Positions 11,199 to 47,300 of a DNA stretch of 64,000 nucleotides are shown in pieces (positions within the stretch are counted from its first letter, which is position 1; every line of letters starts with the position of its first letter). The stretch covers positions 1 to 64,000 of the forward strand of contig NIVC01003967.1 in the NCBI GenBank assembly GCA_002269645.1. The letters run 5' to 3'. The notes below the pieces were generated by a model. It was not told the origin of the DNA. It searched no databases and saw only the letters and a program-made list of their open reading frames with translations. The stretch comes from Macrostomum lignano. Lineage: Eukaryota. A program made the translations under genes and the position numbers.

Positions 11199-13046
11199 AT
11201 GGAGCGGCGCAAGAACGGCGTCATGCTGTTCTGCGAGTGCAGCTCGATCCGAGGAATGCCAAAGATCGCTCGCTCGTCATCAAAATTTCTACGCAAAATG
11301 TGGCTCGCATTTGTCGTTGGAATGAGTCTGGCGTTAATAGTTTCCGTGTCCTTCTCTGTCCATCGCTATCTCAACTATGACGTCATAGTGCATATTTCCG
11401 ACAAGCAGAAGTTCAATTCAAAGTTTCCAGCTATAACGGTGTGCCTGCACCAGCCGTTCTCACGAAGCGCGTTCCCGTTGTGGTCCAACAAATCGGTGAT
11501 GTCGCCGAGAAGCTACAACCGACTACTGCGCGATCTCGCGTTGAAAGCGATCAATAGGACTGGCGATTTCTCAGCTATTAGCAACGATAACATGGACCCC
11601 ATAGAATATGCCCTGTACTACGACTCTGTTGAGGTTTACTATCAGAACATTCCTTACGAGAGCATCATCAGGCTCAGTCACGCACAGAGCGTTATTCGAA
11701 AGTGCATCGTCCGCCAAATGGGCGTTATCTTCTTCAAAGATCCCTGCGACCTCAGCGAGCACGGCTTCGATATAAAACTTTTTTCGCATCCCAAGCACCT
11801 AAACTGCTACACCGTAGAGCCAAGAGAACAGAAAACCTCTCTAGAAACCTACTCCCTTGGACTGGCTGTTGACCTGGGACCCAAGCCCGACTACGCCAAC
11901 CATCAGCAGGGCTTTCTAAACGACGTCTTTGATCAGGCGGCGGGTCTGCGCGTGGTAATCCACGAACCGAACCGCTATCCAGATGTCGAACATCAAGGCA
12001 TGAACATTGAGGCGGGAAAAATGACTGAACTGGCCTACACACCGACTATCTGGAACCGGAGCAACACGCCCGTGAATCCGTGCATCGAGGGCGAGGGTGA
12101 GTCCTACATGGATCTAGGTCGGAACTTTGACTACTCCCAAAAAGAGTGCATCAAGCTCAACAGGCAGCAACTAGTGATGGAGAACTGCAACTGCATCCTG
12201 GGCGTGCCGGGCTACCCCAGGCCCCGAGTGCCCACCAAGGAGAATGCCTACTGTGCTGCTTTCAGCGAGGCCTTCAACAAAACCTTCAAAGACTTCATAG
12301 ACCGTGTTAGCTGCGTCGGCGAAATCATGAGTCGACCTGAGCCGCCTTGCCTATCCCGTTGCGTGCTGTTCGAATACGAAACGAAGATCTCTGTGACCGA
12401 GTGGGGCGCCACAGACTGGCAGGTAGACTGGTCAGGCAGGTACGTGAACGATATTGAAACTCTGGTGAAGCTAATCGAGGCAAGAGAGACAACGCCTGAA
12501 GACTCTCGATCACCGGGATGGCGTAAGAATTTTGACAACGTCAAGCAGCGTCTACTGCGCTACCTAGAGGAAGACAACCTGACTTCGACTGCTCAGACCA
12601 ACGATCGCATGTTGGAATCGAAGAGTTTCGCGTACGTTTTGCTGAAACGAAAGGGCGACAACCTAATTTTAAAGGAGGAGAAGCAGGTGCTGACATTGAA
12701 TGCCCTGATGTCTCAGATTGGCGGGCTCTGCTCCCTAACCATCGGCCTCACTTGCGCTGTCGCCGTTGAAATTGTCGAGTTTGTCTATATCTACCTGACG
12801 TCAAGGCGAAACGACAGCACTGAGAACTCCGCTAATGCCACGGCCGCTGCGGCGGTGACAACAGCGGCTGCGACAGCGGAGAGTCAAGCAGCCGCAGCTG
12901 CGACATCCATGTCAGCCGATGCCATGCGCCTTAGGGCCGCTAATTCTGGATCTGACGGGGACGACATGGACGTCGATGCGGACGGCGATGGCAGCGACCA
13001 GCTTCCGATGAACTGCCACCGTCGGGCGGATGTCTCCCGGCTATGA
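11199..13046 (+). CDS. DEG/ENaC (amiloride-sensitive sodium channel family) subunit, intronless, 615 aa
   Basis: TM1 after the FCECSSIRG motif; FPAITVC; GLRVVIHEP; Cys-rich thumb (ECIK..CNC..C..C..C); TM2 MSQIGGLCSLTIGLT; Ala-rich tail. Confidence 0.92.
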   Translation: MERRKNGVMLFCECSSIRGMPKIARSSSKFLRKMWLAFVVGMSLALIVSVSFSVHRYLNYDVIVHISDKQKFNSKFPAITVCLHQPFSRSAFPLWSNKSVMSPRSYNRLLRDLALKAINRTGDFSAISNDNMDPIEYALYYDSVEVYYQNIPYESIIRLSHAQSVIRKCIVRQMGVIFFKDPCDLSEHGFDIKLFSHPKHLNCYTVEPREQKTSLETYSLGLAVDLGPKPDYANHQQGFLNDVFDQAAGLRVVIHEPNRYPDVEHQGMNIEAGKMTELAYTPTIWNRSNTPVNPCIEGEGESYMDLGRNFDYSQKECIKLNRQQLVMENCNCILGVPGYPRPRVPTKENAYCAAFSEAFNKTFKDFIDRVSCVGEIMSRPEPPCLSRCVLFEYETKISVTEWGATDWQVDWSGRYVNDIETLVKLIEARETTPEDSRSPGWRKNFDNVKQRLLRYLEEDNLTSTAQTNDRMLESKSFAYVLLKRKGDNLILKEEKQVLTLNALMSQIGGLCSLTIGLTCAVAVEIVEFVYIYLTSRRNDSTENSANATAAAAVTTAAATAESQAAAAATSMSADAMRLRAANSGSDGDDMDVDADGDGSDQLPMNCHRRADVSRL

Positions 13047-24643: not shown

Positions 24644-26513
24644 TTATATTTGAGTAGGAGGTTTTTCCAAATAAGCAGTAGAGGGAAAAACATAACCAAA
24701 CGACGTACTACCACATACAACTGCACCACGAATAAAATGTGCAGCATCCGATCCTCCAGTTCGAGCACCAAAACCCATAAGGGTTCCAGTCTTATCCAAC
24801 GTTCCCCAAGTGCCACTATCATATGTGAAAACGTTCTGCCCAATGAGGGTATAAGAATCGGCCGAAACATTGTATGAATTTAATTGATACCAAACCCTTT
24901 GATTTAAAATATTAATTTCAAATAAATGCCAATCGCCGTTATCAATATTTGCATAATCTACCGTTTGATCTGCGTCAGTATTAACATCCGCGCGGCTTGA
25001 TCCGTCTGATTTTTTATTACTCCATACAACGCCAAATTTATCATGCCACTCACTTGCAAAAACTATCAATCCGGCGTCGGTTGTTAATCCAGTCCCACCT
25101 TCACTTGTTGGGCGTTCGTGACAATATGCATAAAACCAAACCGCATCTGCACCATCTCCTGTAGAATTAGCGACTCGGAAATAGAAAGACGCAGATATAT
25201 TTTGAAAATGTGTGAAATTGAATTGTAATGCCCCACTTACTCCACCAGTTTCACGAGTAATTCTAGCTCCATTTTGATAATCGATATAAGAAGCGTCGCC
25301 AATTAAAGAACCAACTGGATATATATCTCCAGCGGTTGTTGGATTTTGATATCCAGTCCAATTACAAATTACTGGCTCGAATAATGCGGCATCAATCGCG
25401 GGAATATTATCCAATTTATTTTTATCACCGGCAGACATTCTACCATTTGAAGTTGGAGTTGCTACCTGATCTACGTACGCTCGCGGGTAGCAGATAGTAT
25501 TTCATTTGGCCAATTAAGATCTTGAATTTCAACTCGGTGTTCAAATAATTGTATTAGACGAACCTCGATAGGTTGTGTAGCGGTGCCACCAGTTGGGAAT
25601 AAAACGCTATAATATTTCCAAAAATTAACCGTTAAATTAGTTAACGCAAATGAAGTTGCTTGAATTGGTGATCCCGACGTTCGTAATACCGTCCATGCAT
25701 CGGTAGCAACATTTTTTGCACGAACCGACCATCCCGATGGAATATCAATAGTTGCGCTGCCTGTAATTCTTAATTCATTTATTCTTCGATTATAACCTAA
25801 AAATTCAAATTGAATTTCCATATTGGTTGTGGTTCCGGTATTTGGTGACCATTGTGTCGCAAGGCTTCCATCTCCAACTCGAAAAGCATCGTTGGTATTT
25901 TCGGATGCTGTAAGAACAACATCTGGATTTGAAGTATTTGATGTAAGCGGCGTGGCAAAAATATCGGCGTCGGTTACATTAGCTCGAGCGTTGACCTGCC
26001 CTAAATTGACCGAGTCTGTGGCCTCTGTTCCAAATAATAAATTTGTTAATTTAAAATTATTCATATTGATATTGCCGTTACGACTACCAACCTGATTATC
26101 GACATAGTTCTTATCAACTACCGAGTTATTCGTTGTAATTGCAACATTTATAATTCGATTGTTATCCATATCTAAAGTTCCGGTTGCGGTGGCTTGAACA
26201 TAACGCGAATCAGAATCAGTTCGAGAATAAGAATCAGTTATATCTCTTTTTAAATTTAACCCAGTGTCAACCTCTGATTTTGTATATGAATCGCTAATAT
26301 CTCTTTTAAGATTTAATGAAGTATCGATTTCAGTTTTGGTATAGGAATCTGCAACATTCCGTTTCAAATTTAGTTTAGTATCAACTTCACTTTTTTATAA
26401 CCTTCATCTTCATTAATATATCGATTATCTCCGAAGGTAACACTTATTCCACCAGACGTACCACCACCAGTACTTGTTGTTCCGTTCCATGAGGGTGTTC
26501 CAGAAAATATCAT
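24644..26513 (-). CDS. Fibre/receptor-binding protein, ~623 aa, split by two -1 frame breaks (~26391, ~25485)
   Basis: YTKxEVD repeats; LDMDNNRIINVA and TDSVNLGQ adhesin-stalk motifs; F5/8-type-C-like domain; GRMSAGDKNKLD motif; C-terminal legume-lectin-like GDGADAVWF..NGDWHLFEI. Confidence 0.8.
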
Positions 26514-26524
26514 TTTTTTACTGT

Positions 26525-26965
26525 CTATTTTATAGAGTCTAAAATAGTCTTAAATACTTTGTGGTTTACACGAGCTTCATTCGAAAGTCGATATAAAAAA
26601 TATAACGCTGCTTGTCCGCAATAACTTTTATCAAAGGTTTGAAACTGTTCGTGATGATCTCCACATAAACGATTTTTAGTATGATTAAATTTATCTTTTA
26701 TTTCCTGTAACGGAGGAAGCGCGTATGAATCAAAAAAATAAACAAGTTTAGGTTTGGAATAAACTGCCGACCAATGAGCCCCGTTTTCTTTTGTAGTTTC
26801 GATGTTGACAATGTAAGATCCATATTGTGGTAAGTCTTTTATCTCATCCCGCATCACACATCTGAATGGTTTTATTTTTAACTGCCGCGCCCAATTTGTT
26901 AATTCGATATTGCTTGTTGTGTCTGTTCCATATCTTTGTTTAAAATCATCCCACGTCATGGTCAT
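26525..26965 (-). CDS. PRO: Adenain-family cysteine maturation protease, 146 aa
   Basis: GAHW, FFDSY, Q..SYCG: catalytic His/Asp/Gln/Cys present. Confidence 0.92.
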   Translation of the reverse strand: MTMTWDDFKQRYGTDTTSNIELTNWARQLKIKPFRCVMRDEIKDLPQYGSYIVNIETTKENGAHWSAVYSKPKLVYFFDSYALPPLQEIKDKFNHTKNRLCGDHHEQFQTFDKSYCGQAALYFLYRLSNEARVNHKVFKTILDSIK

Positions 26966-26966
26966 T

Positions 26967-27140
26967 TTATGTTCCTGAAAAACTCTTGGTTTTAGTTAGT
27001 TTTGTAGGTTTGGATTTTAACAGTTCCTTTCGGATTTTTTCTGCCTGTAATTGTTTCAATTTTGTTAGTTCGATTTCATAATTATCCTTTGCATTTTGAA
27101 CTTTATCTGATTGTTTTTTTAAAGCATTGTTGTTACCCAT
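26967..27140 (-). CDS. Small basic protein, 57 aa, possible N-myristoylation (absent from ORF track)
   Basis: GTAAAAATG then MGNNNALKKQSDKV...TKSFSGT; its stop abuts the protease start. Confidence 0.55.
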   Translation of the reverse strand: MGNNNALKKQSDKVQNAKDNYEIELTKLKQLQAEKIRKELLKSKPTKLTKTKSFSGT

Positions 27141-27184
27141 TTTTACTATGGGAAACGGACGATGTCCTCGAACCTTTGGTTCGG

Positions 27185-27969
27185 CTAAACCTGTTTTATA
27201 CGTAAAATTACTGTTATTGATTGCCCACCAAAACTTATTAATCTATCGGTTTCATCTACAATCCTAATATAAATTGATTGAACATTATATTGATTTAATG
27301 GGTAATATATTGGGGTTTGGGTGAAACAATCATTTTCTCTCCAATTGGAACAGCAAGAAATGGGATGGAATAAATAATTCCACGTTGAACCAAAACTCCA
27401 TTATTATCTGTTATATAACCGCCGTTTGATATGTCGGTTGTTATATTAATTGTATTAACACCACCCTCAATATTTCCAACTGTATCGCCGGTGCTTGATG
27501 TGGTAACTATTCGAGAATTAAATCCAAGTATGGTTCTGAGTGAATTTGCAATTGTGAAATCAACCTGATATCCGGATTCGAGTGATAGTGTGAATCTGCC
27601 AGATGGTAAATCAACACCTATAACAATTGCGCCTGATACCCAATCGCCGTTAGATGTTAATTCTCCTTCTATATAAGCATTCAAATCGGTATAAGAATAT
27701 GCTCCTGGGTTAACGCTAAATGTTGTCCAATTGGCTCCGGAATCTTTAGAATATCTAAATTGATTATTTGTTGCATTAATTAATTGAGGCATGTTAAAAA
27801 CCGAAAATAGTATCAAACCTATTTGATAACTTAGGCTTTGATCAAGTTGTAACGGGTCGCGCAATTGAATACGTTGTTCACTGGTTGTCATTATAAACTG
27901 TAAGGTTGTACTAAATTTTGAATTAGTTCGATCTACCAATTGTTTTATAGTATTTAAATTTGTAGTCAT
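27185..27969 (-). CDS. PX: Minor capsid protein (penton, single jelly-roll), ~261 aa, one -1 break at ~27312
   Basis: Adding one C restores IYYPLNQYNVQSIYIRIVDETDRLISFGGQSITVILRIKQV*, a typical Polinton penton C-terminus. Confidence 0.85.
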
Positions 27970-27984
27970 TTTTATAGTGGGAAA

Positions 27985-28738
27985 TTAATCCTCATCGTCC
28001 TCTTTCATCAGATCTTTTAAGATTCGATTTTTCCTTTCTAACCTTGGGTTGATATATATATGTTTGTATTGGCTATCATCCCAAATTTTTTTACACAACT
28101 TTTAAATGTTTTGTATCCAACCCAGGATTAAATCTAGCGTGTATATTTTGTAAATCATAATTATCTAAATCAAACATTACACAACAACTTGCATTCTTTT
28201 TTATAATCGATTCTAATTCTCTAAAGGACTGTGTTAGATAAAAAGCTCCAATTCCATCTCCTCTACCACTAACAAAAATTTCCTTTTGCAATTCTTGATC
28301 ACCGTCATTAATACAATCATCAAAAATAATTAGTGTTTTATCATGTTTTGGAATTTGATCATAGGCTAATCGGGTTGATACTCTAACAGTTGGGGCTCGT
28401 TCGGTGATGTTTTCTGGTTGTTGTGCCATTGTTTTACATAAATCCTCAATGTCATCGAGTGTAAATCGCGGTTCGTCATCATCCTCATATTGCTCATATG
28501 CTCTTAACATTCTAAACAAGACATCTTTTTTTAATTTGTTTTTTAATCCATGTTTAAGAAATTCATAATATTTTATTCTAGGTTTGTTAGTATAAATTAT
28601 TAAATTATTATAGTCTAACATTCCATCTGTTGTTAATAAATCGTAAACAAAGTGTGTTTTTCCTTTACCTGATCCTCCGATTACTAAACAAAGAAAAGGA
28701 TCATTTGGAAATATCTTATCGTGTTTTGCCTTTACCAT
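27985..28738 (-). CDS. ATP: FtsK/HerA (A32-like) genome-packaging ATPase, ~251 aa, frame break near 28105
   Basis: Walker A GGSGKGKT; Walker B LIIFDD; SGRG..I..FYLTQS; C-terminus FKKLCKKIW..QYKHIYIN in another frame. Confidence 0.92.
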
Positions 28739-28753
28739 TTTTAAAGAAATAAT

Positions 28754-30226
28754 TTAAATAGGCGCGTCCCGAACAATCGTGCCATCAGCTTTAGCAATTG
28801 ACATATATTCCTCTAGAAACAATACGTGTGCGTCTATTGCCTGATTACCAGTTTTATTAATCTCTAACATATAATTAAGTCCAATATTGGCTACGTTTTC
28901 TTTCTGTGCCGTTAGATCATAAACAACCACTGGATGAATGTTTAGAAACTCTGTGGGTGTGTACTGAGGGACGGCATACGCTTCATTTTTGGCATAATCT
29001 TGATAATATTTTATAAAATCATTAACATTATTATTTGCTATATTTAAATTTAGGGGGTCTTTAACCGGATAATATTGATCATCAACCTGCAGGCGGATAT
29101 TCTGAACATTAAACTCGTTAATAGCTGCAGCCGCATTGTCTGTTGCGGTGGCTGCTTGTTCTGCTATGGCACCGGATTGAAGCCAATATAAATCCCCATT
29201 TGCTCTTTTACTCCTTCTGTTTGTTATTTTAAACCAAACAAAAATATATCTCACCCGACGTTTTGATGTCAGTATTTGCCACTGGAATGAATCCTGGTTA
29301 TTATTAATGGTTCGCATAAAATGTCGACGATTCAAATAAAATATTTCCTGATCATGCGTTAACTGATTATCAATGTGTTTTAAAAGTGGGGCTGTTACCT
29401 CAATAGTTGGTACGACTAATTGAATTGAATCTATACGAACTGCTATATCGGTTGAAATTGAGGTTCCATAAAGTATCCTAGGCTGATATCCACCAGATAT
29501 TTGCAACTGTATCCCAAATTTTAATCCTTTCCATACCCGATTTGGTGAGAAGAACCCAAATAGCGGGAAGATTGAAAAGTCCTGCTCATATGCCGTTGCC
29601 GTGGTTAAAACTGCAACTGGGAATTTATTCTGGCGATCTATAAAGCCGGTGTTAATATCTTTTGTATTAGTCATAGTGGTTACAACTGGAACTATGTTTG
29701 TATTAAGGTAAGCAATTAGAGCTGCAGTATCTGCACCAGCTGCGTTTTGTACATTAGGGAAAACTACTGCTTGACCGTTACCTTTATCCGGCATCCACCC
29801 AACATTATCACCAACTTGTTTTGATAAATAAGTATAATTTAAATGTTTCAAAACTCCATTAATCTCTGCGGGGTTTGATGATGTCTCAACCTCAGCACCA
29901 TTAACAGTTAGTTGAGCTTGGGAAAAACATTTATAAAACCAATCATTTTCTATTATTATTCCGGATCGATCTGCGATATCTCCGGCTGCAAGAGCAGTTC
30001 CATCATTTCTAGTATACAACCATCTAACGCGGAAAAACGCATTTTTCATATCCAATATAGTGTTGGTTGCGCCGATGTCAAAAGTTACCGTTCCAGTAGT
30101 AAAGTTATTTGAATTATCACTTGTTGGTAGGGTATAATTTAAATCTCTTGCTCTGACCTCATTAATATACTGTCGGTGCTTTTTGAAATGAAATTTATCA
30201 CTCCACATAGTTTTTGTTTCAGCCAT
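28754..30226 (-). CDS. PY: Double-jelly-roll major capsid protein, 490 aa, intact
   Basis: Size and position; Polinton MCP-like segments FSQAQLTVNGAEVE, FGFF, RYIFVWF, NIRLQVDDQYYP, VYDLT. Confidence 0.88.
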   Translation of the reverse strand: MAETKTMWSDKFHFKKHRQYINEVRARDLNYTLPTSDNSNNFTTGTVTFDIGATNTILDMKNAFFRVRWLYTRNDGTALAAGDIADRSGIIIENDWFYKCFSQAQLTVNGAEVETSSNPAEINGVLKHLNYTYLSKQVGDNVGWMPDKGNGQAVVFPNVQNAAGADTAALIAYLNTNIVPVVTTMTNTKDINTGFIDRQNKFPVAVLTTATAYEQDFSIFPLFGFFSPNRVWKGLKFGIQLQISGGYQPRILYGTSISTDIAVRIDSIQLVVPTIEVTAPLLKHIDNQLTHDQEIFYLNRRHFMRTINNNQDSFQWQILTSKRRVRYIFVWFKITNRRSKRANGDLYWLQSGAIAEQAATATDNAAAAINEFNVQNIRLQVDDQYYPVKDPLNLNIANNNVNDFIKYYQDYAKNEAYAVPQYTPTEFLNIHPVVVYDLTAQKENVANIGLNYMLEINKTGNQAIDAHVLFLEEYMSIAKADGTIVRDAPI

Positions 30227-30259
30227 TTTTTTAAGTTAAAAATTTTTTTATGTTAAAAA

Positions 30260-30931
30260 ATGAGTCAATTTATGGACGTTGATGGAGAGTTAGCGATTTA
30301 TAAAGAGAAGCAAAGATATTCTGATTTTGTTAGAAATTTACAAAAAAGAAAGTTAGGAATACAATTAGCTGGCGAAAGATTTGCTGCTCCTTTTGTTAAT
30401 CCTATTACTGGGAAAATTAGTGAACTAGAAAAAACAGATAAAGATCTTCTGGAAAAAATTGCTACGAATACTGAGCCAAAAGAGGATGAAATTTTGGATG
30501 AGCCGCCTACTTATGGTGTTGCTCATGCACAATTGAGAGTTGCAGAGATTAGACGTGCAGAAAGGAATGGAGTTGAACAATATCAGAGAGCTGCACCACA
30601 AAGTATTGCTGTGATGGATTTAGGTAATGATAATTATCGAATTGGTGGAGTTGATAAAAATCAGAATGAACTATATACAGAATTGGGTGGAGCGTTTAAT
30701 ATTATTATGAACCCTAGGGTAAAGTTTAACCCTGAATTATATACTAGAGATGAATTAGTAAGTGCAAAAATTTTTTATGATGAGTTGGGAATAAGAGCTG
30801 CTAAAAATACCAGCTTGTATAAAAGGATTGTTGATTCTATAAATAACAAACCGGTCGTTGGTGAAGGATTTAAAACTCCTAGAAAACTTGTTTTAGCTGC
30901 TGCGAAAGCTGCTGGACATACTGGTGTTTAA
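30260..30931 (+). CDS. Conserved-type Polinton protein (PW/PZ-like), 223 aa
   Basis: FVNPIT N-terminal motif; GEG..KLVLAAAKAAGHTG C-terminal motif. Confidence 0.55.
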   Translation: MSQFMDVDGELAIYKEKQRYSDFVRNLQKRKLGIQLAGERFAAPFVNPITGKISELEKTDKDLLEKIATNTEPKEDEILDEPPTYGVAHAQLRVAEIRRAERNGVEQYQRAAPQSIAVMDLGNDNYRIGGVDKNQNELYTELGGAFNIIMNPRVKFNPELYTRDELVSAKIFYDELGIRAAKNTSLYKRIVDSINNKPVVGEGFKTPRKLVLAAAKAAGHTGV

Positions 30932-30958
30932 TTAATTGTTAAATTTATTTTTTATAAA

Positions 30959-31528
30959 ATGGATGAAACAAAAATTTGTACTACGTGTAAAATTGAGAAA
31001 CCGATGACTAAAGAATTTTTTTGTTGGAGAAACGATTCGAAAAAATTTAGAAATGATTGTCGATCATGTCATAATACTTCGTCTACAATGTGGATGAAAA
31101 ACAATAAAGATAAATGGAAAGAATATAGAAAAAATAAATATCACACCGATGAAAATTACAAAAATATTACTCTAATTAGAAATAGAATAAATTGGGCGTT
31201 GAAAAATTTTAATGACAAGGACTATATCTCATATCTTGGTTGCACAAAAGAATTCTTTTTTGATTGGTTAAATTTCACAAGAAATTATTATGTATCAAAA
31301 GATTATACTGGAAAGTTAGATATTGATCATTTGATCCCCGCTTCTTCATTTACTTACAAAGATAATGACCAGATGAAAAAGTCTGAAAATTGGAGAAATA
31401 AAAGATACTTAACTAGCGCAGATAATCGCTATAAAAAAGTTAAGCAACCAACTATCGAAGAATTTGCAAAACAATTAGTGTTAACTTGTATTTTTAAGGC
31501 TATTAAAAATGAACCAACTTGTGTTTGA
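30959..31528 (+). CDS. Zn-finger plus HNH endonuclease (giant-virus/phage type), 189 aa
   Basis: CTTC..CRSC; YLGCTKE; IDHLIP..WRN..ADNRYK. Confidence 0.8.
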   Translation: MDETKICTTCKIEKPMTKEFFCWRNDSKKFRNDCRSCHNTSSTMWMKNNKDKWKEYRKNKYHTDENYKNITLIRNRINWALKNFNDKDYISYLGCTKEFFFDWLNFTRNYYVSKDYTGKLDIDHLIPASSFTYKDNDQMKKSENWRNKRYLTSADNRYKKVKQPTIEEFAKQLVLTCIFKAIKNEPTCV

Positions 31529-32783
31529 AGGAGGATTGTTAGATGTTCAAAAAGGATTAACAAGCTTACCACCAATCTTTACTACTGGAAGGTATACAAA
31601 TGAATTACACATCCCATCTTACAACTTCGCAGGCCCGGGGACTAGGTTAGATTTGAGATTAAATCCTGATAATACTCCAAAAGCCGATTCAATTCCCATT
31701 AACGGTATTGATTGGTTAGCATACTATCATGACTTAGCATACAGAGATGCTGATAAGAACTCACCCGAGGAAGCATTAAGATTAAAACATGAAGCCGATA
31801 GAAAAATGATTCAAGGATTAGATAACTTACAGGGCTTATCGGTAGGTCAAAAATTAACTAGATGGATGGTTAAAAAAATCTTACAGTCTAAAGTTAAATT
31901 TGGTTTGGGAATTAATTATAATCAACATGGAAATAATTGTGTTGAGTGTTTATTATTAAGTGGTAGTGGGTTAAGTTCTGATGAGGCAAAAGTTCTTCAT
32001 AAAGAATATCGAAAACCTAAATTTTATAGAAAAATCATGAACTTCAAAAAGAATGAAATTTGGTATGCTGATTTAATGTCATTGCCGAGCGACAGAGGAT
32101 ATAAATATATTTTAACCATATTGGATGGTTTTACTCGATACGCGTGGGCAGTTCCTTTAAAATCCAAAAAGGGAGAGGAGGTTGCTGCTGCTTTTAGAAG
32201 TCTTGATGAAAAAAGTGAACGGTTGTGTGTTGATGAGGGAAAAGAATTTTACAATCCTCATATGTATAAATTATATCATTTTGAAAAAGGACAAGAAAGG
32301 AAAAAAGACGCGAATGGGGAGTATATTAATAAAATTTATTCTATTTATGGAGAAAGTAAAAACGCATTAATAGAAAGATTTAATCGAACTTTAGGTAAGA
32401 AATTATGGTTTCAGTTTAGTCTTAATGGAAACCAAAAGTGGGTAAAAATATTACCAGACGTTGTAAAAGATTATAACAATTCATATCATTCGGCTATAAA
32501 GATGACTCCTCAACAAGCTTATAACAATCCTGAAAAAGTTAAAGTTACTTTTGGAGAATTTGAAAAAAAGAAAACTAAAGGTTTTAAGGTTGGTGATTCT
32601 GTTTATATCTATAAATGGAAAGATAAGTTTGAAAAAGGAAGAAAAGGATATTGGAAGATAAGTGAGAAATTTACCATCAGTAAAGTTTTAAATACAAATC
32701 CTACAACCTATATAATTGCTGATAAGGATGGTGAAGAAATATTGGGTTCTTTTTATGAGAATCAGATATTATCTGCAAACTAA
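31509..32783 (+). CDS. INT: Parvovirus VP1u-type phospholipase A2 fused to retroviral-like DDE integrase, 424 aa
   Basis: YNFAGPGT, AYYHDLAY, EADRKM (PLA2); WYADLM, CVDEGKEF, LIERFNRTL (D,D,E); FKVGD..GSFYE C-terminal domain. Confidence 0.95.
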   Translation: MNQLVFEGGLLDVQKGLTSLPPIFTTGRYTNELHIPSYNFAGPGTRLDLRLNPDNTPKADSIPINGIDWLAYYHDLAYRDADKNSPEEALRLKHEADRKMIQGLDNLQGLSVGQKLTRWMVKKILQSKVKFGLGINYNQHGNNCVECLLLSGSGLSSDEAKVLHKEYRKPKFYRKIMNFKKNEIWYADLMSLPSDRGYKYILTILDGFTRYAWAVPLKSKKGEEVAAAFRSLDEKSERLCVDEGKEFYNPHMYKLYHFEKGQERKKDANGEYINKIYSIYGESKNALIERFNRTLGKKLWFQFSLNGNQKWVKILPDVVKDYNNSYHSAIKMTPQQAYNNPEKVKVTFGEFEKKKTKGFKVGDSVYIYKWKDKFEKGRKGYWKISEKFTISKVLNTNPTTYIIADKDGEEILGSFYENQILSAN

Positions 32784-32793
32784 GTTCGAACAG

Positions 32794-32961
32794 TTACTTA
32801 AGACAACAAGGTAGTAAATTTTTTATAACAAACAAAAACAATATTATTACTATTATTGTTACTAATATTATTATTGACATTTGTTCAACTGTTATCAAAC
32901 TTAAATTTTCATTAAGTTCATTAATCGGCACATTTCCGATGTAGGAATAATTTACCTTCAT
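32794..32961 (-). CDS. Small single-pass membrane protein, 55 aa (absent from ORF track)
   Basis: TAAAAAAAATG start; MKVNYS..SIIILVTIIVIILFLFVIKNLLPCCLK*. Confidence 0.55.
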   Translation of the reverse strand: MKVNYSYIGNVPINELNENLSLITVEQMSIIILVTIIVIILFLFVIKNLLPCCLK

Positions 32962-33022
32962 TTTTTTTATATATATTTTTCATAATAAATGTCGTTTCTG
33001 TTATAGAATAATAATTCATTTT

Positions 33023-33337
33023 TTACATAAAAATTTCAATTTCATTCTCAGAATCACTGGTTTCATATGAGCTATTTGTTGATTCGGAATCTGTTGATCT
33101 AACCTCCCAATCATCCGAATTTAAATAATCTCCAAGTTGAAATATTAACTCTCCCTCTTGTTCTAATTCATACATCTCATCTAGCTCTAATGGATAAAGC
33201 TTTAGGTCATGCTTGTCGTCATATTTTAAATAAACTTCATCAATTATTCCATTCAAAATATGTTGTTTTATTATCTCTGCATTTTTAGCAACAGTCTCAA
33301 AAGTATCACTAACAGAAAAGGTGTAAACTCGGGTCAT
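33023..33337 (-). CDS. Polinton acidic orphan, 104 aa
   Basis: TAAAAATG start; D/E/S-rich C-terminus. Confidence 0.65.
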   Translation of the reverse strand: MTRVYTFSVSDTFETVAKNAEIIKQHILNGIIDEVYLKYDDKHDLKLYPLELDEMYELEQEGELIFQLGDYLNSDDWEVRSTDSESTNSSYETSDSENEIEIFM

Positions 33338-33354
33338 TTTTAGTAACAGAAAAA

Positions 33355-33660
33355 GACCCTTCGCGCCTGCGGCGCGGGCAAGGGGTTATAGAGTAGTAGT
33401 ATAGAAAAAGACGCTTACAGATCAGACCTTATTTTAATGGCCGTTTTTAAGGTCTTAAGAGGGGGGACGCGAGGGGGTGTTGGGGAGTGTTTGGAAGTGT
33501 TGGGAATGATTTTTATTGTTAGGGGTGATTATGGGTGATTAGATGTATTAATGGTGTTTAGATGTGTTTTTTTATTTACCCCCCGTGTCCCCCCTCTAGA
33601 CCCTTAAAACGGTCATTAAAAAAGTGCTCTGGGTCTGTAAGCGTCTTTTTCTATACTACT
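33355..33660 (-). repeat. Right terminal inverted repeat (306 bp)
   Basis: Reverse complement of 16488-16793. Confidence 0.98.
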
Positions 33661-33666
33661 GAACAG

Positions 33667-36700: not shown

Positions 36701-36721
36701 TCTCAGATCTCCTACGAATAC

Positions 36722-36870
36722 TATAGCATTTCTCAAGCCAATTGATCCTAGGAGCAAGCAATTTAATCCTTAGTGGGAAAATCAAGCTATTGAAGACTTG
36801 CTTTTCATCGTCTATGGCCTAAGGATTAAATTGCTTGCTCCTAGGCTCAATTGGCTTGAAAAATGCTATA
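36722..36870. mobile_element. Foldback MITE-like element
   Basis: 52-bp inverted arms (36722-36773 / 36819-36870) with two mismatches; TA at both ends. Confidence 0.7.
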
Positions 36871-37958
36871 TTACTATTTACACTGTTCGAGATTTGTATT
36901 TCACACTACACACTACTACGCTCGTATTTGACAAGAGAAAATAAAAAGCAGAAGATACGAGCATGCATGCAAATAATTCTGTGACGGAACACCTCAAATT
37001 CCGCAGGTTTTCCTTATTATTTTTAATCCAAACTTCATTTAAATACAGGTAAAAGAGGGTTAAAATTATTTTCGGAGTCCTTGAATGAGTAGTAAAAGAT
37101 AATCACATACTATTACGGCCATAGACATCAAATCTGATTGGTATTTAAAGTCATTTGAAACAAGGTGTGGCTCTGCCAGTCGATCCCAAAACAACTAAAA
37201 CAGCTACTCGCACATTAATCGACTATAAGAAGTTGCATTCTTACTTTCTGGCAAGTCAACATAGCAAATATAGCAAATAATTTGCTTTGCACTTTGTTTC
37301 TGTTTTGACTGACTCTGCATGGTTCCACGATTGCTTTCTGGCTGCATTGCTGATTCGGACATTTAAAATTATTTTAGGCTGAGTAAATAATCGTACGAGC
37401 AGATCGTATTTAACTTAGGTACGAATTAATTAAGCGACTTAGCACTGGAGGTCGGTCTGCAGGAATGTTTAACCAAAGTTCCCAATAGCCTAGTGTCGGT
37501 CAGGACACTTCCCTACGTTCCCTTCTCTAAAAAGCCTTCCCTACGGGGCTTGAATTACATGAATTGTACTAAAAAAGACGACAAAGCAAAGCTGCGCGTT
37601 CGAGAATAAAATTTGCCAGGTGTTCAAGCAAAACTAATAAAACCCACCAACAGCATTCACCGGCGCGGTAGAAAAGACCGCTAGATAACGATTATAAGAG
37701 ACCTTGCTCAGGCCACAACAGGGGCTAAGATAGGCGCTGGAAATTCTGTCCGGCCTTAGCACTTTTCCGCCATTGGCTGGCCGAGCGACTTCTGCACGAA
37801 CTGACCGTATTTAAATAAAAAAGCAACGCTGATTATTTTGTTGCGCGCAGTAGAACAGACGGCAGAGTTATAACAGCTGGTAGCTCTGAACTCAATCTAA
37901 ATTGAAAGCATAGAAACAAACAACATTATAAACCTGTCAGCTCGACTGCTTGGAAGAA

Positions 37959-39131
37959 ATGGACACTTACAGCGGCGAAAACGCCACGGACTGTATGCAG
38001 AGTCTCGAAGATCGCTACAACAGCACCCTGGGAGTGTGCAGCGCATTTCTACCGGGTGTTGTCACCTTTGCCCGAATCATCATTCCGATGTGGATAGCCC
38101 TAGGCGTGCCAGGTTCGCTCCTGAGCTTGCTGGTGTGGAGCAGCAAGCCGATGCGCTCGTCCTCAAGCGTCTACCTCTGCGCACTGGCTATTCTAGACCT
38201 GATGTTCCTGCTCTGCCAGCAGCTGCCGTTTCACCTGTATTTATACTACGACATCAAGGTAATGTACAATCCACTCATGTGCAGAGCATTCCCAGTGTAC
38301 AACATGTGGCTGCAGTACCTGTCGCCCCTGCTAACCCTCGGTTTCACTGTCGAACGCTACATCGGCATCTGTCATCCATTCAGCCGGAAAGAATTCTGCA
38401 CAGTTCGACGCGCTATTATCGTTGTCTCATGCATGACCGTTGCCTGTCTAGTACTGGGCCTAGTGCAGCTGCACTTTTACCGGTACAATCCAGTCGAAGC
38501 CACTTGCTCGGAGGATTTGCGAATATTCGATCCGAGCACGTTCGAGCATCGGTTCTACAGCGGCTGGTCCAAGCTCACCGAGGTGCTGTTCTTCGCCCTG
38601 GCTCCAGTAGCCATTCTAGTCTTCAACATTCTCGTGCTAGTCGAGGCTCGACGTGTCATCCGGAAACGACCAGCCGGTACTGGTCAGAGAAAATCCGCCG
38701 CTACCACGGCCACTCTGCTAACCGTCAGTTTCTATCAGATTGGCGCGGTGCTACCCGTCACGATTCTATTGTTTGTCGGGCTGGCAATTCTCACCGAGGC
38801 GCCGCAGCTTCCGTGCGGCATTTCAGACTCGGACGCGCTGCATCAAATTACCGATGGCCAGTGGCCGGTGGCCAGGTCCTACCTGACCTACCTGACAGTG
38901 AGCCGAATAGTCGACTGTCTGGCTGTCAGTCATTACGCTATGAAGTTTGTCATCTACCTGGCAACAGGCCAAGGCTTCAGGCGCCAACTGGGTCAAAGCC
39001 TGCCGCGCTTCCTGCACTGCGGCAGCGCAGACGACTACGACGGGATCCGACAGCACAGGAGTCAACAGCGGAGAAGGAAGCGAGCGGCGAACAGCTGCCT
39101 GGCGTCGGATGGTACAGCAATGCTGCCATAG
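37959..39131 (+). CDS. Rhodopsin-family peptide GPCR (FMRFamide/sex-peptide-receptor-like), intronless
   Basis: Seven hydrophobic segments; LAILD (TM2); ERYIGICHP; N-glycosylation sites at N-terminus; ATG at 37959. Confidence 0.92.
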   Translation: MDTYSGENATDCMQSLEDRYNSTLGVCSAFLPGVVTFARIIIPMWIALGVPGSLLSLLVWSSKPMRSSSSVYLCALAILDLMFLLCQQLPFHLYLYYDIKVMYNPLMCRAFPVYNMWLQYLSPLLTLGFTVERYIGICHPFSRKEFCTVRRAIIVVSCMTVACLVLGLVQLHFYRYNPVEATCSEDLRIFDPSTFEHRFYSGWSKLTEVLFFALAPVAILVFNILVLVEARRVIRKRPAGTGQRKSAATTATLLTVSFYQIGAVLPVTILLFVGLAILTEAPQLPCGISDSDALHQITDGQWPVARSYLTYLTVSRIVDCLAVSHYAMKFVIYLATGQGFRRQLGQSLPRFLHCGSADDYDGIRQHRSQQRRRKRAANSCLASDGTAMLP

Positions 39132-44300: not shown

Positions 44301-47300
44301 TCACCAATTCAGAGACACGGATTCACTGATTCAGAAATACAGATTCACCAATTCAGAGATACAGATTCACCAATTCAGAGATACGGATTCACCAATTCAG
44401 AGATACGGTTTCACTAATTCAGAGATACGGTTTTACCAATTTAGAGACACGGATTCACTGATTCAGAAATACAGATTCACCAATTCAGAGATACAGATTC
44501 ACCAATTCAGAGACACGGATTCACTGATTCAGAAATACAGATTCACCAATTCAGAGATACAGATTCACCAATTCAGAGATACGGATTCACCAATTCAGAG
44601 ATACAGATTCACCAATTCAGAGATACAGATTCACCAATTCAGAGACACGGATTCACTGATTCAGAAATACAGATTCACCAATTCAGAGATACAGATTCAC
44701 CAATTCAGAGACACGGATTCACTGATTCAGAAATACAGATTCACCAATTCAGAGATACAGATTCACCAATTCAGAGATACGGATTCACCAATTCAGAGAT
44801 ACGGTTTCACTAATTCAGAGATACGGTTTTACCAATTCAGAGATACAGATTCACTAATTCAGAGATACAGATTCACCAATTTAGAGACACGGATTCACTG
44901 ATTCAGAAATACAGATTCACCAATTCAGAGATACAGATTCACCAATTCAGAGATACAGATTCACCAATTCAGAAATACAGATTCACCAATTCAGAGATAC
45001 AGATTCACCAATTCAGAGATACAGATTCACCAATTCAGAGATACAGATTCACCAATTCAGAAATACAGATTCACTAATTCAGAGATTCGGATTCACCAAT
45101 TCAGAGATACAGATTCACCAATTCAGAGACATGGATTCACTGATTCAGAGATACAGATTCACCAATTCAGAGATACAGATTCACCAATTCAGAGATACAG
45201 ATTCCCCAATTCAGAGATACAGATTCACCAATTCAAAGATACAGATTCACCAATTCAGAAATACAGATTCACCAATTCAAAGATACAGATTCACCAATTC
45301 AGAAATACAGATTCACCAATTCAGAGATACAAATTCGCCAATTCAGAAATACAGATTCACCAATTCAGAGATACAGATTCACCAATTCATAGATACAGAT
45401 TCACCAATTCAGAGATACAGATTCGCCAATTCAGAAATACAGATTCACCAATTCAGAGATACAGATTCACCAATTCAGAGATACAGATTCCCCAATTCAG
45501 AAATACAGATTCACCAATTCAAAGATACAGATTCACCAATTCAGAAATACAGATTCACCAATTCAGAGATACAAATTCACCAATTCAGAAATACAGATTC
45601 ACTAATTCAGAGATTCGGATTCACCAATTCAGAGATACAGATTCACCAATTCAGAGACACGGATTCACTGATTCAGAAATACAGATTCACCAATTCAGAG
45701 ATACAGATTCACAAATTCAGAGACACAGATTCACCAATTCAGAGATACAGATTCACCAATTCAGAGATACAGATTCACCAATTCAGAGATACAGATTCCC
45801 CAATTCAGAGATACAGATTCACCAATTCAAAGATACAGATTCACCAATTCAGAAATACAGATTCACCAATTCAGAGATACAAATTCGCCAATTCAGAAAT
45901 AAAGATTCACCAATTCAGAGATACAGATTCACCAATTCATAGATACAGATTCACCAATTCAGAGATACAGATTCGCCAATTCAGAAATACAGATTCACTA
46001 ATTCAGAGATTCGGATTCACCAATTCAGAGATACAGATTCACCAATTCAGAGACATGGATTCACTGATTCAGAAATACAGATTCACCAATTCAGAGATAC
46101 AGATTCACCAATTCAGAGATACAGATTCACCAATTCAGAGATACGGATTTACCAATTCAGAGACACAGATTCACCAATTCAGAGATACAGATTCACCAAT
46201 TCAGAGATACGGATTCACCAATTCAGAGATACGGTTTCACTAATTCAGAGATCCGGATCTACCAATTCAGAAATTCGGACATGTCAACTCAGATAGGATA
46301 TTCACTGAACTCGAACTAATAGAAGAAAAAGTCATAGTAGAGAAAGCATTAAACTTTACCTACCTAGCTCCCAAATCAGGCCAATGTCCTATGTGGTTTA
46401 TTTGAACCAATCGACCAAACTTTTCCGGCGTTGTTGCGGCGTCAAACGGTTGGCCAAGAGCCAAACCGACAGGAACCTGAAATTGATTGGTTGACTGAGA
46501 AAATGAAACTCAAACTTTTAGTCTAGGGGCCAATCTGGGGGCGCCAATGTTAAGAAAAATGTATTATTAAATGTACGTATGAGGGTATCCAATCTAGGGT
46601 GCTAGGGGGCGCCAATCCGGGTGCTAGGTGAGGCGCCAATCCGGGTGCTAGGTGAGGCGCCAATCTGGGTGCTGGGGAGGCGCCAATCCAAGTGCTAGGG
46701 GAGGCGCCAATCTGGTTGCTAGGAGAGGCGCCAATCTGGGTGCTGGGGGAGGCGCCAATCTGGGTGCTAGGGGAGGCGCCAATCTGGTTGCTAGGAGAGG
46801 CGCCAATCTGGGTGCTGGGAGAGGCGCCAATCCAGGTACTAGAGGAGGCGCCAATCCAGGTACTAGGGGAGGCGCCAATCTAGGTGCTGGGAGGGGCGCC
46901 AATTCAGGTGCTAGGGGAGGCGCCAATCCAGTTACTAGGGGAGGCGCCAATCTGGGTGCTAGGAGAGGCGCCAATCCAGGTACTAGGGGAGGCGCCAATC
47001 TGGGTGCTAGGAGAGGCGCCAATCTGGGTGCTGGGAGAGGCGCCAATCCAGGTACTAGGGGAGGCGCCAATCTAGGTGCTAGGGGAGGCGCCAATCAGGC
47101 GCCAATCTGGGTGCTGGAAAAGGCGCCAATCTGGGTGCTAGGTGAGGCGCCAATCTGGGTATTAGGTGAGGCGCCAATCTGGGTGCTGGGGGAGGCGCCA
47201 ATCCGGGTGCTAGGTGAGGCGCCAATCTGGGTGCTAGGTGAGGCGCTAATCTGGGTGCTAGGGGAGGCGCCAATCTGGGTGCTGGGAGAGGCGCCAATCC

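What the first reader, a model, noticed from the sequence alone, without database searches (positions are those of the whole stretch)
24644..26513. Mosaic fibre with two tandem glycan-binding modules
Seen: repairing two 1-bp breaks gives one ~623-aa ORF. Order: YTKxEVD repeats, autotransporter/phage-fibre stalk motifs (TDSVNLGQ; MSAGDKNKLD), an F5/8-type-C-like domain (~25520-25930), and a terminal legume-lectin-like domain (~24660-25330; GADAVWF, DNGDWH). Inference: a trimeric receptor-binding spike built from bacterial/phage-like modules, implying an extracellular stage and glycan-defined tropism.
Basis: partly seen in the sequence, partly recalled or inferred. Interest (0 to 1): 0.75.

Follow-up and report, generated by a model that had tools for sequence, protein, structure and literature searches.

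The report
Broken lectin-tipped fibre gene of a Maverick
The region is the fibre (attachment protein) gene of a recently inserted 17-kb Maverick/Polinton virus-like element in an animal genome; it has a phage-style stalk and a legume-lectin-type tip, is split by two frameshifts in this copy, and belongs to a kind of gene already described in related viruses.

Summary
The sequence-level observation holds. 24644-26513 (- strand) is one gene of about 623 codons, read in three frames and broken by two frameshifts with no stop codons. The closest relative reads the later junction in a single frame.

The gene is the last structural gene of a 17,173-bp Maverick/Polinton element (16488-33660). The element has perfect 306-bp terminal inverted repeats and a 6-bp target duplication, and it sits among animal ion-channel and receptor genes.

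- **Stalk:** three 19-residue repeats match a phage L-shaped tail fibre, followed by a neck motif also seen in phage fibres and autotransporter adhesins. These matches are weak.
- **Tip:** the C-terminal domain belongs to the concanavalin-A-like / L-type lectin superfamily. This rests on profile matches of its relatives, not on the window protein alone.
- **Middle domain:** the discoidin label is only suggestive (E about 0.01, below the curated cut-off).
- **Structure:** both AlphaFold models were unusable.

Trimer formation and glycan binding are inferred, not shown. As it stands this copy cannot make the full-length protein, and the polymerase gene also carries two frameshifts. Lectin-tipped, phage-like fibres are already described in polinton-like viruses, so this is a new member of a known kind. 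The fibre is shared (about 60% identity) with a contig whose other seven genes have no match here.

The parts
24644..26513 (-). Fibre gene of the element, about 623 codons. Broken by 2 frameshifts and 0 stop codons, so it reads as three pieces in three frames.
   Evidence: Continuity across the later junction is shown by relative P0001/L001.
26188..26358 (-). Shaft repeats: three copies of a 19-residue unit (D/N-I/V-x-D-S-Y-T/S-K/R-T/S-E/D-x-D...).
   Evidence: PDB 8hqz 'L-shaped tail fiber assembly' E 4.8e-4. P0003 E 9.2e-8. phrog_5004 1e-5 and phrog_10305 (tail fibre) 1.5e-4.
25948..26085 (-). Neck-like motif (…KLTNLLFGTEATDSVNLGQV…).
   Evidence: Pfam YadA_stalk E 0.019, 15.8 bits against cut-off 28.4. 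phrog_25848 tail fibre 1.4e-4. PDB 4usx adhesin 0.067 and Gp44 8es4 0.082.
25531..25920 (-). Middle globular domain, possibly discoidin / galactose-binding-domain-like. Bounds are approximate.
   Evidence: Sole Pfam hit F5_F8_type_C, E 0.0096, 16.5 bits against cut-off 28.2, model positions 5-87 of 127. Sole NCBIfam hit NADase_discoid, E 0.052. Its C-terminal half is 41% identical to L001 (E 5e-14). No other relatives were found.
25409..25438 (-). Linker motif MSAGDKNKLD. It also precedes the tip domain in distant relatives, and occurs twice in P0001.
   Evidence: P0007 and P0011 begin MSxxDKxKLD just upstream of the domain. BppL_N weak hit in P0004.
24704..25375 (-). C-terminal tip domain of the concanavalin-A-like / L-type lectin superfamily. 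It carries GADAVWFY and FGARTGG…H motifs.
   Evidence: 33 relatives in 1.84e9 representatives. The family profile hits legume lectin 7elv E 5.9e-6, VIP36 2.4e-4 and ERGIC-53 7e-4. 15 of 24 members hit Pfam Lectin_L-type_dom, best 3.1e-9.
16488..33660 (.). The whole Maverick/Polinton element: 17,173 bp, GC 32.5% against 43% in the flanks.
16488..16793 (+). Left terminal inverted repeat (306 nt, 100% complementary to the right one), preceded by the target duplication GAACAG (16482-16487).
33355..33660 (-). Right terminal inverted repeat, followed by the target duplication GAACAG (33661-33666).
26525..26965 (-). Upstream neighbour, a presumed maturation protease. H, D, Q and C residues are visible in adenain order. 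There is no profile hit.
   Evidence: Read in the translation. Pfam and PDB found nothing. Inferred.
27295..27969 (-). Presumed minor capsid (penton) protein.
   Evidence: Position and size only; no profile hit. Inferred.
28091..28738 (-). Packaging ATPase, A32-like.
   Evidence: Pfam Pox_A32 E 4.5e-7, 30 bits, above the cut-off of 22.8.
28754..30226 (-). Presumed major capsid protein (490 aa).
   Evidence: Position and size only; no significant Pfam or PDB hit. Inferred.
18944..22436 (+). Protein-primed family B DNA polymerase gene with an Endonuclease VII-like insert. Broken by 2 frameshifts and 0 stop codons.
   Evidence: Family B motifs are read in order in the translations: Exo I-III, then the three polymerase motifs ...DANNLYG...NNAFYGK and YADTDS, then KCY. 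Frames checked. Endonuclease_7 E 3.8e-7. There is no DNA_pol_B profile hit.
31509..32783 (+). Integrase (rve core) with an N-terminal PLA2-like domain in the same ORF.
   Evidence: Pfam Phospholip_A2_4 E 2e-7. rve E 1.1e-6, 29.2 bits against cut-off 32.6.
23658..24314 (-). Downstream neighbour on the same strand: a 218-aa protein with hydrophobic segments, function unknown.
   Evidence: no Pfam hit.

Best explanation
24644-26513 (- strand) is the fibre gene, that is the host-attachment protein, of an endogenous Maverick/Polinton (adintovirus-like) element that inserted recently into an animal genome.

The encoded protein would have these parts, in order:
- a short Gly/Thr/Ser-rich N-terminus, inferred to be the capsid-vertex attachment;
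- a shaft of 19-residue phage-type repeats and a neck motif, inferred to be trimeric as in phage fibres and autotransporter adhesins;
- a middle beta-rich domain that may be discoidin-like;
- a conserved MSxxDKxKLD linker;
- a C-terminal concanavalin-A-like / L-type-lectin domain.

The tip domain is the likely receptor-binding part, and the receptor is probably a carbohydrate (inferred). In this copy the gene carries two frameshifts, so the full-length protein cannot be made from the sequence as assembled. The fibre module is shared with a contig on which no other gene matches the window. This suggests that fibres move as cassettes between such elements.
For: One gene:
- The three frames overlap by 8 and 10 codons.
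- P0001/L001 reads the end of the middle domain, the linker and the tip in one frame.
- The repeat pattern continues upstream of the first start codon of the middle piece.

Element:
- 306-nt perfect terminal inverted repeats.
- 6-bp GAACAG duplication on both sides, and AG…CT termini.
- A32-like ATPase, rve integrase and PLA2-like domain.
- Family B polymerase motifs.
- All presumed structural genes and the fibre lie on one strand, 30226 down to 24644.

Host is an animal: ASC channel, rhodopsin-type receptor and Cys-loop receptor genes lie in the flanks.

Shaft: PDB 8hqz E 4.8e-4; PHROG tail-fibre families.

Tip:
- phmmer found 33 relatives.
- The family profile against PDB gives legume lectin 7elv at E 5.9e-6 over almost the whole chain, then VIP36, ERGIC-53, neurexin LNS domains and laminin G.
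- 15 of 24 family members hit Pfam Lectin_L-type_dom, 10 hit 3keto-disac_hyd and 7 hit Laminin_G_2. By my own knowledge of Pfam, these all belong to the ConA-like clan.
- GAD aligns with the sugar-binding Asp motif of VIP36 and legume lectin. FG.GARTGG…H aligns with their FG.S..TG…H motif.

Phage link: P0004 (40% identical in the tip domain) lies between a capsid/portal block and a beta-helix tailspike-like gene.

Cassette exchange: L001 shares only the fibre with the window.

Precedent: polinton-like virus fibres with Laminin_G_3, discoidin, YadA and BppL_N modules (PMC12220804); 'Fiber' and 'Lectin' genes in related midsize (MELD) viruses (PMC8502044).
Against: - The window's tip domain itself hits no Pfam or PDB entry. 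The lectin assignment is transitive, through relatives.
- The metal-binding loop of L-type lectins cannot be aligned with confidence.
- 10 of 24 relatives also match an enzyme-named family of the same clan.
- The discoidin assignment is below every cut-off.
- AlphaFold models have pLDDT 33 and 31, so no fold was verified.
- The major capsid, penton and protease identities rest on position, size and motifs seen by eye, with no profile support.
- The junction between the first and second pieces has no homologue to confirm it.
- The gene is broken and no intact copy was found anywhere.
Confidence: 0.7

Rival explanations
1. The gene is intact in the organism. On this reading, the two frameshifts here and the two in the polymerase gene are insertion/deletion errors of the assembly, and the element is a complete, very young provirus.
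For: - All four breaks in the element are frameshifts and none is a stop codon.
- The 306-nt terminal repeats are 100% identical and the target duplication is perfect. That indicates very little time for decay.
- The element is AT-rich (32.5% GC), a composition in which indel errors are commoner (my own knowledge).
Against: - Long host genes in the flanks and the other element genes read through without breaks.
- The metagenomic relative L001 also carries a break, one stop codon, in its fibre homologue. Decay of this gene therefore does occur.
- No reads are available to decide.
Confidence: 0.3
2. The tip is an enzyme rather than a lectin. On this reading the ConA-like domain cleaves or modifies a surface glycan, as phage tailspike depolymerases do.
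For: - 10 of 24 family members match Pfam 3keto-disac_hyd (best 4.8e-9). Single members match polysaccharide-lyase and alginate-lyase families of the same clan.
- The neighbour of P0004 in its phage contig is a beta-helix pectate-lyase-like protein.
Against: - The most frequent match (15 of 24 members; best E 3.1e-9) is to non-catalytic L-type lectin domains, with 3keto-disac_hyd close behind on E-value (4.8e-9), and the best full-length PDB match is a legume lectin.
- The conserved GAD and TG…H motifs are those of lectins.
- No catalytic motif of a glycoside hydrolase family was recognised.
Confidence: 0.12
3. The pieces are independent genes, or only the third piece is used. It starts with ATG and holds the linker motif plus the whole tip domain, and could be made as a free lectin of about 260 residues.
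For: - The third piece begins with ATG.
- Stand-alone relatives of about 275 residues with the same motif plus domain exist among the representatives: P0007 and P0012.
Against: - The Met is part of the conserved (L)MSxxDKxKLD motif and is internal in P0001.
- Homology to L001 runs on upstream of it in the other frame.
- The frames overlap with no spacer, promoter room or intron room.
- The middle piece has no ATG near its start.
Confidence: 0.08
4. The two frame changes are programmed ribosomal frameshifts used to make nested products.
For: Viruses and phage tail genes use programmed frameshifts (established knowledge). The frames overlap, as such sites require.
Against: - The relative reads the later junction in a single frame, so a shift there is not conserved.
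- The polymerase gene shows the same kind of break, which points to damage or error rather than design.
- I saw no canonical in-frame slippery heptamer at both junctions (read).
Confidence: 0.02

Closest known systems
Fibre proteins of polinton-like viruses and other midsize eukaryotic linear dsDNA (MELD) viruses (PMC12220804; PMC8502044; oomycete Polintons in bioRxiv 10.1101/2023.08.22.554363)
   Same: Modular, phage-like fibre genes in elements with the same capsid and packaging module. Modules already reported there include ConA-like Laminin_G_3, discoidin, YadA-type and BppL_N-type parts, and 'lectin' genes.
   Different: - The host here is an animal. In the papers I read, the fibre-bearing examples are from protists, fungi and oomycetes.
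- The tip family here is not covered by any Pfam model at the level of the window protein.
- There is no Peptidase_S74 chaperone domain.
Tailed-phage tail fibres: the L-shaped tail fibre (PDB 8hqz) and the fibre P0004 in phage contig L009
   Same: The YTKxEVD-type shaft repeat (E 4.8e-4), the neck motif (PHROG tail-fibre families), and a tip domain 40% identical to that of P0004.
   Different: - The gene sits in a eukaryotic element with no tail genes.
- tblastn against 50,697 GenBank phage records found nothing.
- Similarity is confined to modules.
L-type lectins (legume lectins, ERGIC-53, VIP36; Pfam Lectin_L-type_dom, Lectin_leg-like)
   Same: Family-profile matches over nearly the whole domain. 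The (G/A)D(G/A) Asp motif and the C-terminal FG.S/G.TG…H motif are shared.
   Different: - The window protein alone matches none of them.
- The Ca/Mn-binding loop is not clearly conserved.
- There is an extra conserved P-T-x-E segment.
- Sugar binding is untested.
Adenovirus fibre
   Same: The expected role is the same: a vertex-attached fibre with a distal receptor-binding domain on a capsid of the same lineage (inference; PMC12220804 draws the same parallel).
   Different: No sequence match to adenovirus tail, shaft or knob models. The tip fold class is different.
Trimeric autotransporter adhesins (YadA stalk/neck)
   Same: A 'TDSVNLGQ'-type neck motif (YadA_stalk E 0.019; PDB 4usx E 0.067).
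   Different: The match is below the cut-off. There is no membrane anchor domain, and the gene is not in a bacterium. The motif is shared with phage fibres.
Fusogen of nematode Mavericks/Polintons
   Same: An entry-related accessory gene added to the same core element.
   Different: It is a membrane-fusion protein implying an enveloped particle. No such gene was recognised here; a fibre is present instead.

Membership tests
Maverick/Polinton element (context of the gene) | Long terminal inverted repeats | tested here: met
   306 nt, 100% complementary, 16488-16793 and 33355-33660.
Maverick/Polinton element (context of the gene) | 6-bp target site duplication | tested here: met
   GAACAG on both sides.
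Maverick/Polinton element (context of the gene) | Retrovirus-type (rve) integrase | tested here: met
   Pfam rve E 1.1e-6. At 29.2 bits it is just below the curated cut-off of 32.6.
Maverick/Polinton element (context of the gene) | Protein-primed family B DNA polymerase | tested here: inconclusive
   All family B motifs can be read in order in the three pieces. No Pfam or PDB profile hit was found. The gene has 2 frameshifts.
Maverick/Polinton element (context of the gene) | Capsid module: packaging ATPase, double jelly-roll major capsid protein, penton, cysteine protease | tested here: inconclusive
   The ATPase is met (Pox_A32, 30 bits, above the cut-off of 22.8). The other three rest on position, size and motifs seen by eye only.
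L-type lectin / concanavalin-A-like superfamily (tip domain) | Significant profile match to the family | tested here: met
   Met at family level: profile A2 against legume lectin 7elv E 5.9e-6, VIP36 2.4e-4, ERGIC-53 7e-4. 15 of 24 members hit PF18483, best 3.1e-9. The window protein alone has no hit.
L-type lectin / concanavalin-A-like superfamily (tip domain) | Beta-sandwich (jelly-roll) fold | tested here: inconclusive
   The AlphaFold2 model is all-beta but has pLDDT 33. No fold search was run on it.
L-type lectin / concanavalin-A-like superfamily (tip domain) | Sugar-binding Asp and Ca/Mn-binding loop | tested here: inconclusive
   The GAD Asp (D98) and an acidic residue (E130) are nearly invariant and align near the expected places. 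The rest of the loop is not alignable with confidence.
L-type lectin / concanavalin-A-like superfamily (tip domain) | Carbohydrate binding | not testable with these tools
   No biochemical data.
F5/8 type C (discoidin) domain (middle domain) | Pfam PF00754 match at or above the gathering score | tested here: not met
   16.5 bits against 28.2, E 0.0096, although it is the only hit. NCBIfam discoidin-type model E 0.052. hhalign to a weak F5_F8_type_C_2 region of L007 gave probability 0.85%.
F5/8 type C (discoidin) domain (middle domain) | Discoidin beta-barrel fold | tested here: inconclusive
   AlphaFold2 single-sequence model with pLDDT 31.
Trimeric autotransporter adhesin | YadA stalk/neck match above the cut-off, plus a C-terminal membrane anchor | tested here: not met
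   YadA_stalk 15.8 bits against 28.4. No anchor or head domain hit.
Phage tail fibre | Match to tail-fibre families or solved fibres | tested here: met
   The matches are to modules only: 8hqz E 4.8e-4; phrog_25848 and phrog_10305 at about 1.5e-4. No whole-gene homologue was found in phage records.
Adenovirus fibre | Adenovirus tail, shaft-repeat or knob sequence models | tested here: not met
   No such Pfam hit at E <= 0.1.

The most novel reading that the evidence does not exclude
An animal Maverick that integrated very recently uses a non-enveloped, phage-style entry device tipped with a lectin, rather than the fusogen known from nematode Mavericks. Its fibre cassette was exchanged (about 60% identity in the tip) with an otherwise unrelated element that encodes a primase-helicase. 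That would make fibre swapping between distant lineages of midsize eukaryotic DNA viruses directly visible in an animal genome.
Probability: 0.3. Interest if true: 0.55.

Novelty: new member of a known kind. Interest (0 to 1): 0.35.

Why it matters
How Mavericks/Polintons of animals leave and enter cells is largely unknown. The best-studied animal case, in nematodes, points to a membrane fusogen.

A fibre with a lectin-type tip in an animal-genome element with perfect ends would point to a second, adenovirus-like route, with host range set by surface glycans. The near-absence of relatives shows how thinly this gene pool is sampled: two close ones among 5.8 billion clustered proteins. The fibre is shared with a contig whose other genes do not match. 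This fits the idea that attachment modules are exchanged as cassettes.

The general principle, phage-like fibres with lectin modules in polinton-like viruses, is already published. The gain is therefore incremental.

Tried and rejected
- **AlphaFold2.** The tip (3-sequence alignment) gave pLDDT 33 and the middle piece (single sequence) gave pLDDT 31.
- **Direct Pfam, PHROG, NCBIfam and PDB searches with the tip alone.** Nothing useful came back.
- **Word-index homology search for the middle domain.** No hit even at E <= 10. Whole middle piece: one hit, on the repeats only.
- **IMG/VR scans.** None for the middle domain or the presumed capsid protein. One distant giant-virus contig for the tip.
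- **JGI metagenomes.** Only distant tip relatives.
- **tblastn against GenBank phages.** No match for either large piece.
- **Exact-sequence look-ups of the capsid protein and the tip piece.** Not on record, so no sister copies were found.
- **DNA tandem-repeat search.** The shaft repeats are visible only at protein level.
- **Rfam on the whole window.** Nothing.
- **Intron explanation for the frame changes.** Rejected. The frames overlap by 8-10 codons, and homology to the relative is colinear across the later junction.
- **Alternative genetic code for the stop in L001.** Rejected. Its other genes have long standard-code ORFs and use TAA, TAG and TGA as stops.
- **Profile support for the polymerase, capsid, penton and protease.** None found.
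Full report
**What is in the sequence**

On the - strand between 24644 and 26513 there are three consecutive open reading frames, one short and two of roughly 260-300 codons. Each is in a different frame. The open stretches of neighbouring frames overlap by 8 and 10 codons. A single frameshift at each junction therefore accounts for the layout, and no stop codon has to be read through. The span is 1870 nt, about 623 codons.

The shaft repeat occurs three times with a period of 19 residues in the middle piece. It is not detectable as a DNA tandem repeat.

**Is it one gene?**

For the later junction, yes.
- The closest relative in 5.8 billion clustered proteins is P0001 (E 1e-99, 59-62% identity), encoded on a 6.3-kb ENA metagenome contig, L001.
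- P0001 reads in one frame from the end of the middle domain, through two copies of the MSxxDKxKLD motif, into the tip domain.
- Upstream, in the same frame of L001, tblastn finds the C-terminal half of the window's middle domain (41% identity over 78 residues, E 5e-14).

For the earlier junction no homologue exists. However, the middle frame is open upstream of its first start codon, and the repeat pattern runs on across the boundary.

Other explanations for the frame changes are weak.
- Introns are excluded by the overlap of frames and the colinear homology.
- Programmed frameshifting is unlikely, because the relative needs none at the later junction and the polymerase gene of the same element shows the same kind of damage.

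Count of breaks: fibre, 2 frameshifts and 0 stops; polymerase, 2 frameshifts and 0 stops. The other ORFs of the element read through as they stand.

**Context**

The gene lies inside a 17,173-bp element, 16488-33660.
- It is bounded by 306-nt terminal inverted repeats that are 100% complementary.
- A perfect 6-bp duplication, GAACAG, flanks it, and the termini read AG…CT.
- Its GC content is 32.5%, against 43% in the flanks.

It encodes the following:
- an A32-like packaging ATPase, with a Pfam match above the cut-off;
- an rve integrase whose ORF also holds a parvovirus-type PLA2-like domain;
- a polymerase with an Endonuclease VII-like insert, whose translation shows the family B exonuclease and polymerase motifs in order.

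The presumed major capsid protein, penton and protease are assigned from position, size and motifs seen by eye only. Profile searches gave nothing for them.

From 30226 down to 24644, the capsid gene, ATPase, penton, a 57-codon ORF, the protease and the fibre all lie on the - strand with short spacers. The fibre is thus the last gene of the structural block.

The flanks carry an ASC/DEG-ENaC channel, a rhodopsin-type receptor, a Cys-loop receptor and a mariner-like remnant. The host is therefore an animal. Together these features are the definition of a Maverick/Polinton (adintovirus-like) endogenous element, and the perfect ends suggest a recent insertion.

**The modules**

*Shaft.*
- The repeats match PDB 8hqz, deposited as 'L-shaped tail fiber assembly' (E 4.8e-4). 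From my own knowledge, this type of fibre is that of phage T5.
- They also match a metagenomic protein, P0003 (E 9.2e-8), and PHROG families including tail fibres (1e-5 to 1.5e-4).

*Neck.* The TDSVNLGQ region matches the following:
- Pfam YadA_stalk only below the cut-off (E 0.019, 15.8 against 28.4 bits);
- a trimeric autotransporter adhesin (4usx, E 0.067) and a phage Gp44 (8es4, E 0.082);
- tail-fibre PHROGs.

This is a motif shared with phage fibres. It is not evidence of adhesin membership.

*Middle domain.*
- When scanned alone, its only Pfam hit is F5_F8_type_C (E 0.0096-0.016, 16 bits against 28.2, model positions 5-87 of 127).
- Its only NCBIfam hit is a discoidin-type glycan-binding model (E 0.052).
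- Nothing was found in PDB, in the word-index database even at E <= 10, in IMG/VR, or in the 32 fetched loci apart from L001.
- A profile comparison with a weak discoidin-like stretch of L007 was not significant.

The label is a reasonable lead, not a result.

*Tip.*
- phmmer against 1.84 billion representatives gave 33 relatives (E 1e-26 to 1e-3). In most of them the domain lies inside long multidomain proteins.
- A 24-sequence alignment of the domain (A2) hits, as a profile, a legume lectin (7elv, E 5.9e-6, nearly full length), VIP36, ERGIC-53, neurexin LNS domains, laminin G and SHBG.
- Scanned singly, 15 of 24 members hit Pfam Lectin_L-type_dom (best 3.1e-9), 10 hit 3keto-disac_hyd, 7 hit Laminin_G_2 and 5 hit Lectin_leg-like. 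By my own knowledge of Pfam, all are families of the concanavalin-A-like clan.
- In the printed alignments, the family's GAD motif lies on the HGDG / GADG motif of VIP36 and the legume lectin. Its FG.GARTGG…H motif lies on their FG.S/G.TG…H motif.
- The metal-binding loop cannot be placed with confidence.

Carbohydrate binding remains an inference.

**Where the tip module comes from**

- The best distant relative, P0004 (40% identity), is encoded in a tailed-phage contig. It lies between a capsid/portal block and a beta-helix tailspike-like gene.
- In reference genomes the domain is found mainly in Patescibacteria/Saccharibacteria MAGs, at about 33% identity.
- In giant-virus MAG contigs it sits in arrays with H_lectin, Laminin_G_3 and, weakly, a discoidin-type domain.

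'Built from bacterial/phage-like modules' is thus supported. Tandem lectin-type modules are a recurrent design in viral proteins.

L001 shares only the fibre with the window. Its other seven genes, including a D5-like primase-helicase, have no match here. This suggests transfer of the fibre as a cassette, but L001 is too short to show its capsid genes.

**What could not be tested**

Both AlphaFold2 jobs gave unusable models (pLDDT 33 and 31), so no fold search was run. A prediction of the whole fibre or of a trimer would have needed a frame-joined sequence, which I did not build. Trimer formation, vertex attachment and glycan specificity are inferred from the families named above.

No reads are available, so real frameshifts cannot be told from assembly errors.
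- In favour of error: all four breaks are frameshifts, and the ends of the element are perfect.
- Against error: the long host genes nearby are unbroken, and the relative L001 has its own break, one stop codon.

**Comparison with what is known**

- Phage-like fibres with ConA-like (Laminin_G_3), discoidin, YadA-type and BppL_N-type modules have been catalogued in polinton-like viruses of protists (PMC12220804).
- 'Fiber' and 'Lectin' genes are drawn in maps of related midsize DNA viruses (PMC8502044).
- Oomycete Polintons carry beta-helix fibre-like proteins, while nematode Polintons carry a fusogen (bioRxiv 10.1101/2023.08.22.554363).

The present gene is therefore a new member of a known kind. 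What is slightly unusual:
- the host is an animal;
- the tip family has almost no close relatives;
- the fibre is shared with a contig of different gene content.

**Verdict**

Interest is modest.

Noticed in passing
window 31509-32783 (+): One 424-codon ORF combines a parvovirus-type PLA2-like domain (Pfam E 2e-7; YxGPG and HD motifs visible) with the rve integrase core (E 1.1e-6). The adintovirus paper describes PLA2 fused to a pX-like domain, not to the integrase.
   Followed up: no
window 18944-22436 (+): The polymerase gene has an Endonuclease VII-like insert (E 3.8e-7) and is itself split by 2 frameshifts. No Pfam DNA_pol_B model recognises any piece, although all family B motifs can be read.
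   Followed up: partly
window 17385-18371 (+): A Gly/Ala-rich hydrophobic 328-residue protein with a weak match to adenovirus core protein X (E 0.0026). It may be the pX-like virion protein of adintovirus-type elements.
   Followed up: no
L001 1-1154: The only close relative of the fibre, on a 25%-GC metagenome contig, carries one in-frame stop codon in its own fibre homologue. It is followed by genes unrelated to the window element, including a D5-like primase-helicase.
   Followed up: partly
L010-L025 (reference genome contigs): The tip-domain family is commonest in Patescibacteria/Saccharibacteria MAGs, at about 26-34% identity. I did not check whether those copies are prophage fibres or cell-surface proteins.
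   Followed up: no
L002 1535-4426 and L007 7769-11533: Giant-virus-MAG proteins of about 960-1250 residues string together H_lectin, LamG-type, Laminin_G_3 and (in L007) a weak discoidin-type domain. These are multi-lectin arrays related to the window's tip.
   Followed up: partly
window 30959-31528 (+): A 189-residue ORF between the capsid block and the integrase has Cys pairs and a DHLIP…N pattern that looks like an HNH endonuclease by eye. There is no Pfam hit.
   Followed up: no
window 45131-46243 (+) and 46001-48000: A BspA-type leucine-rich-repeat ORF (E 2e-19) shows many spurious-looking extra Pfam hits, next to the most GC-rich stretch of the window (56%). The sequence is probably repetitive.
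   Followed up: no
window 36719-36873: A 55-nt inverted repeat pair, 95% complementary and 45 nt apart, lies 3 kb from the element. It may be a small foldback or MITE-like element.
   Followed up: no
window 11199-13046, 37950-39131, 60797-62176, 57562-58182: Host genes are read as single uninterrupted ORFs: an ASC channel (615 aa), a rhodopsin-type receptor and a Cys-loop receptor (459 aa). There is also a mariner-like transposase remnant. This points to an intron-poor animal genome.
   Followed up: partly
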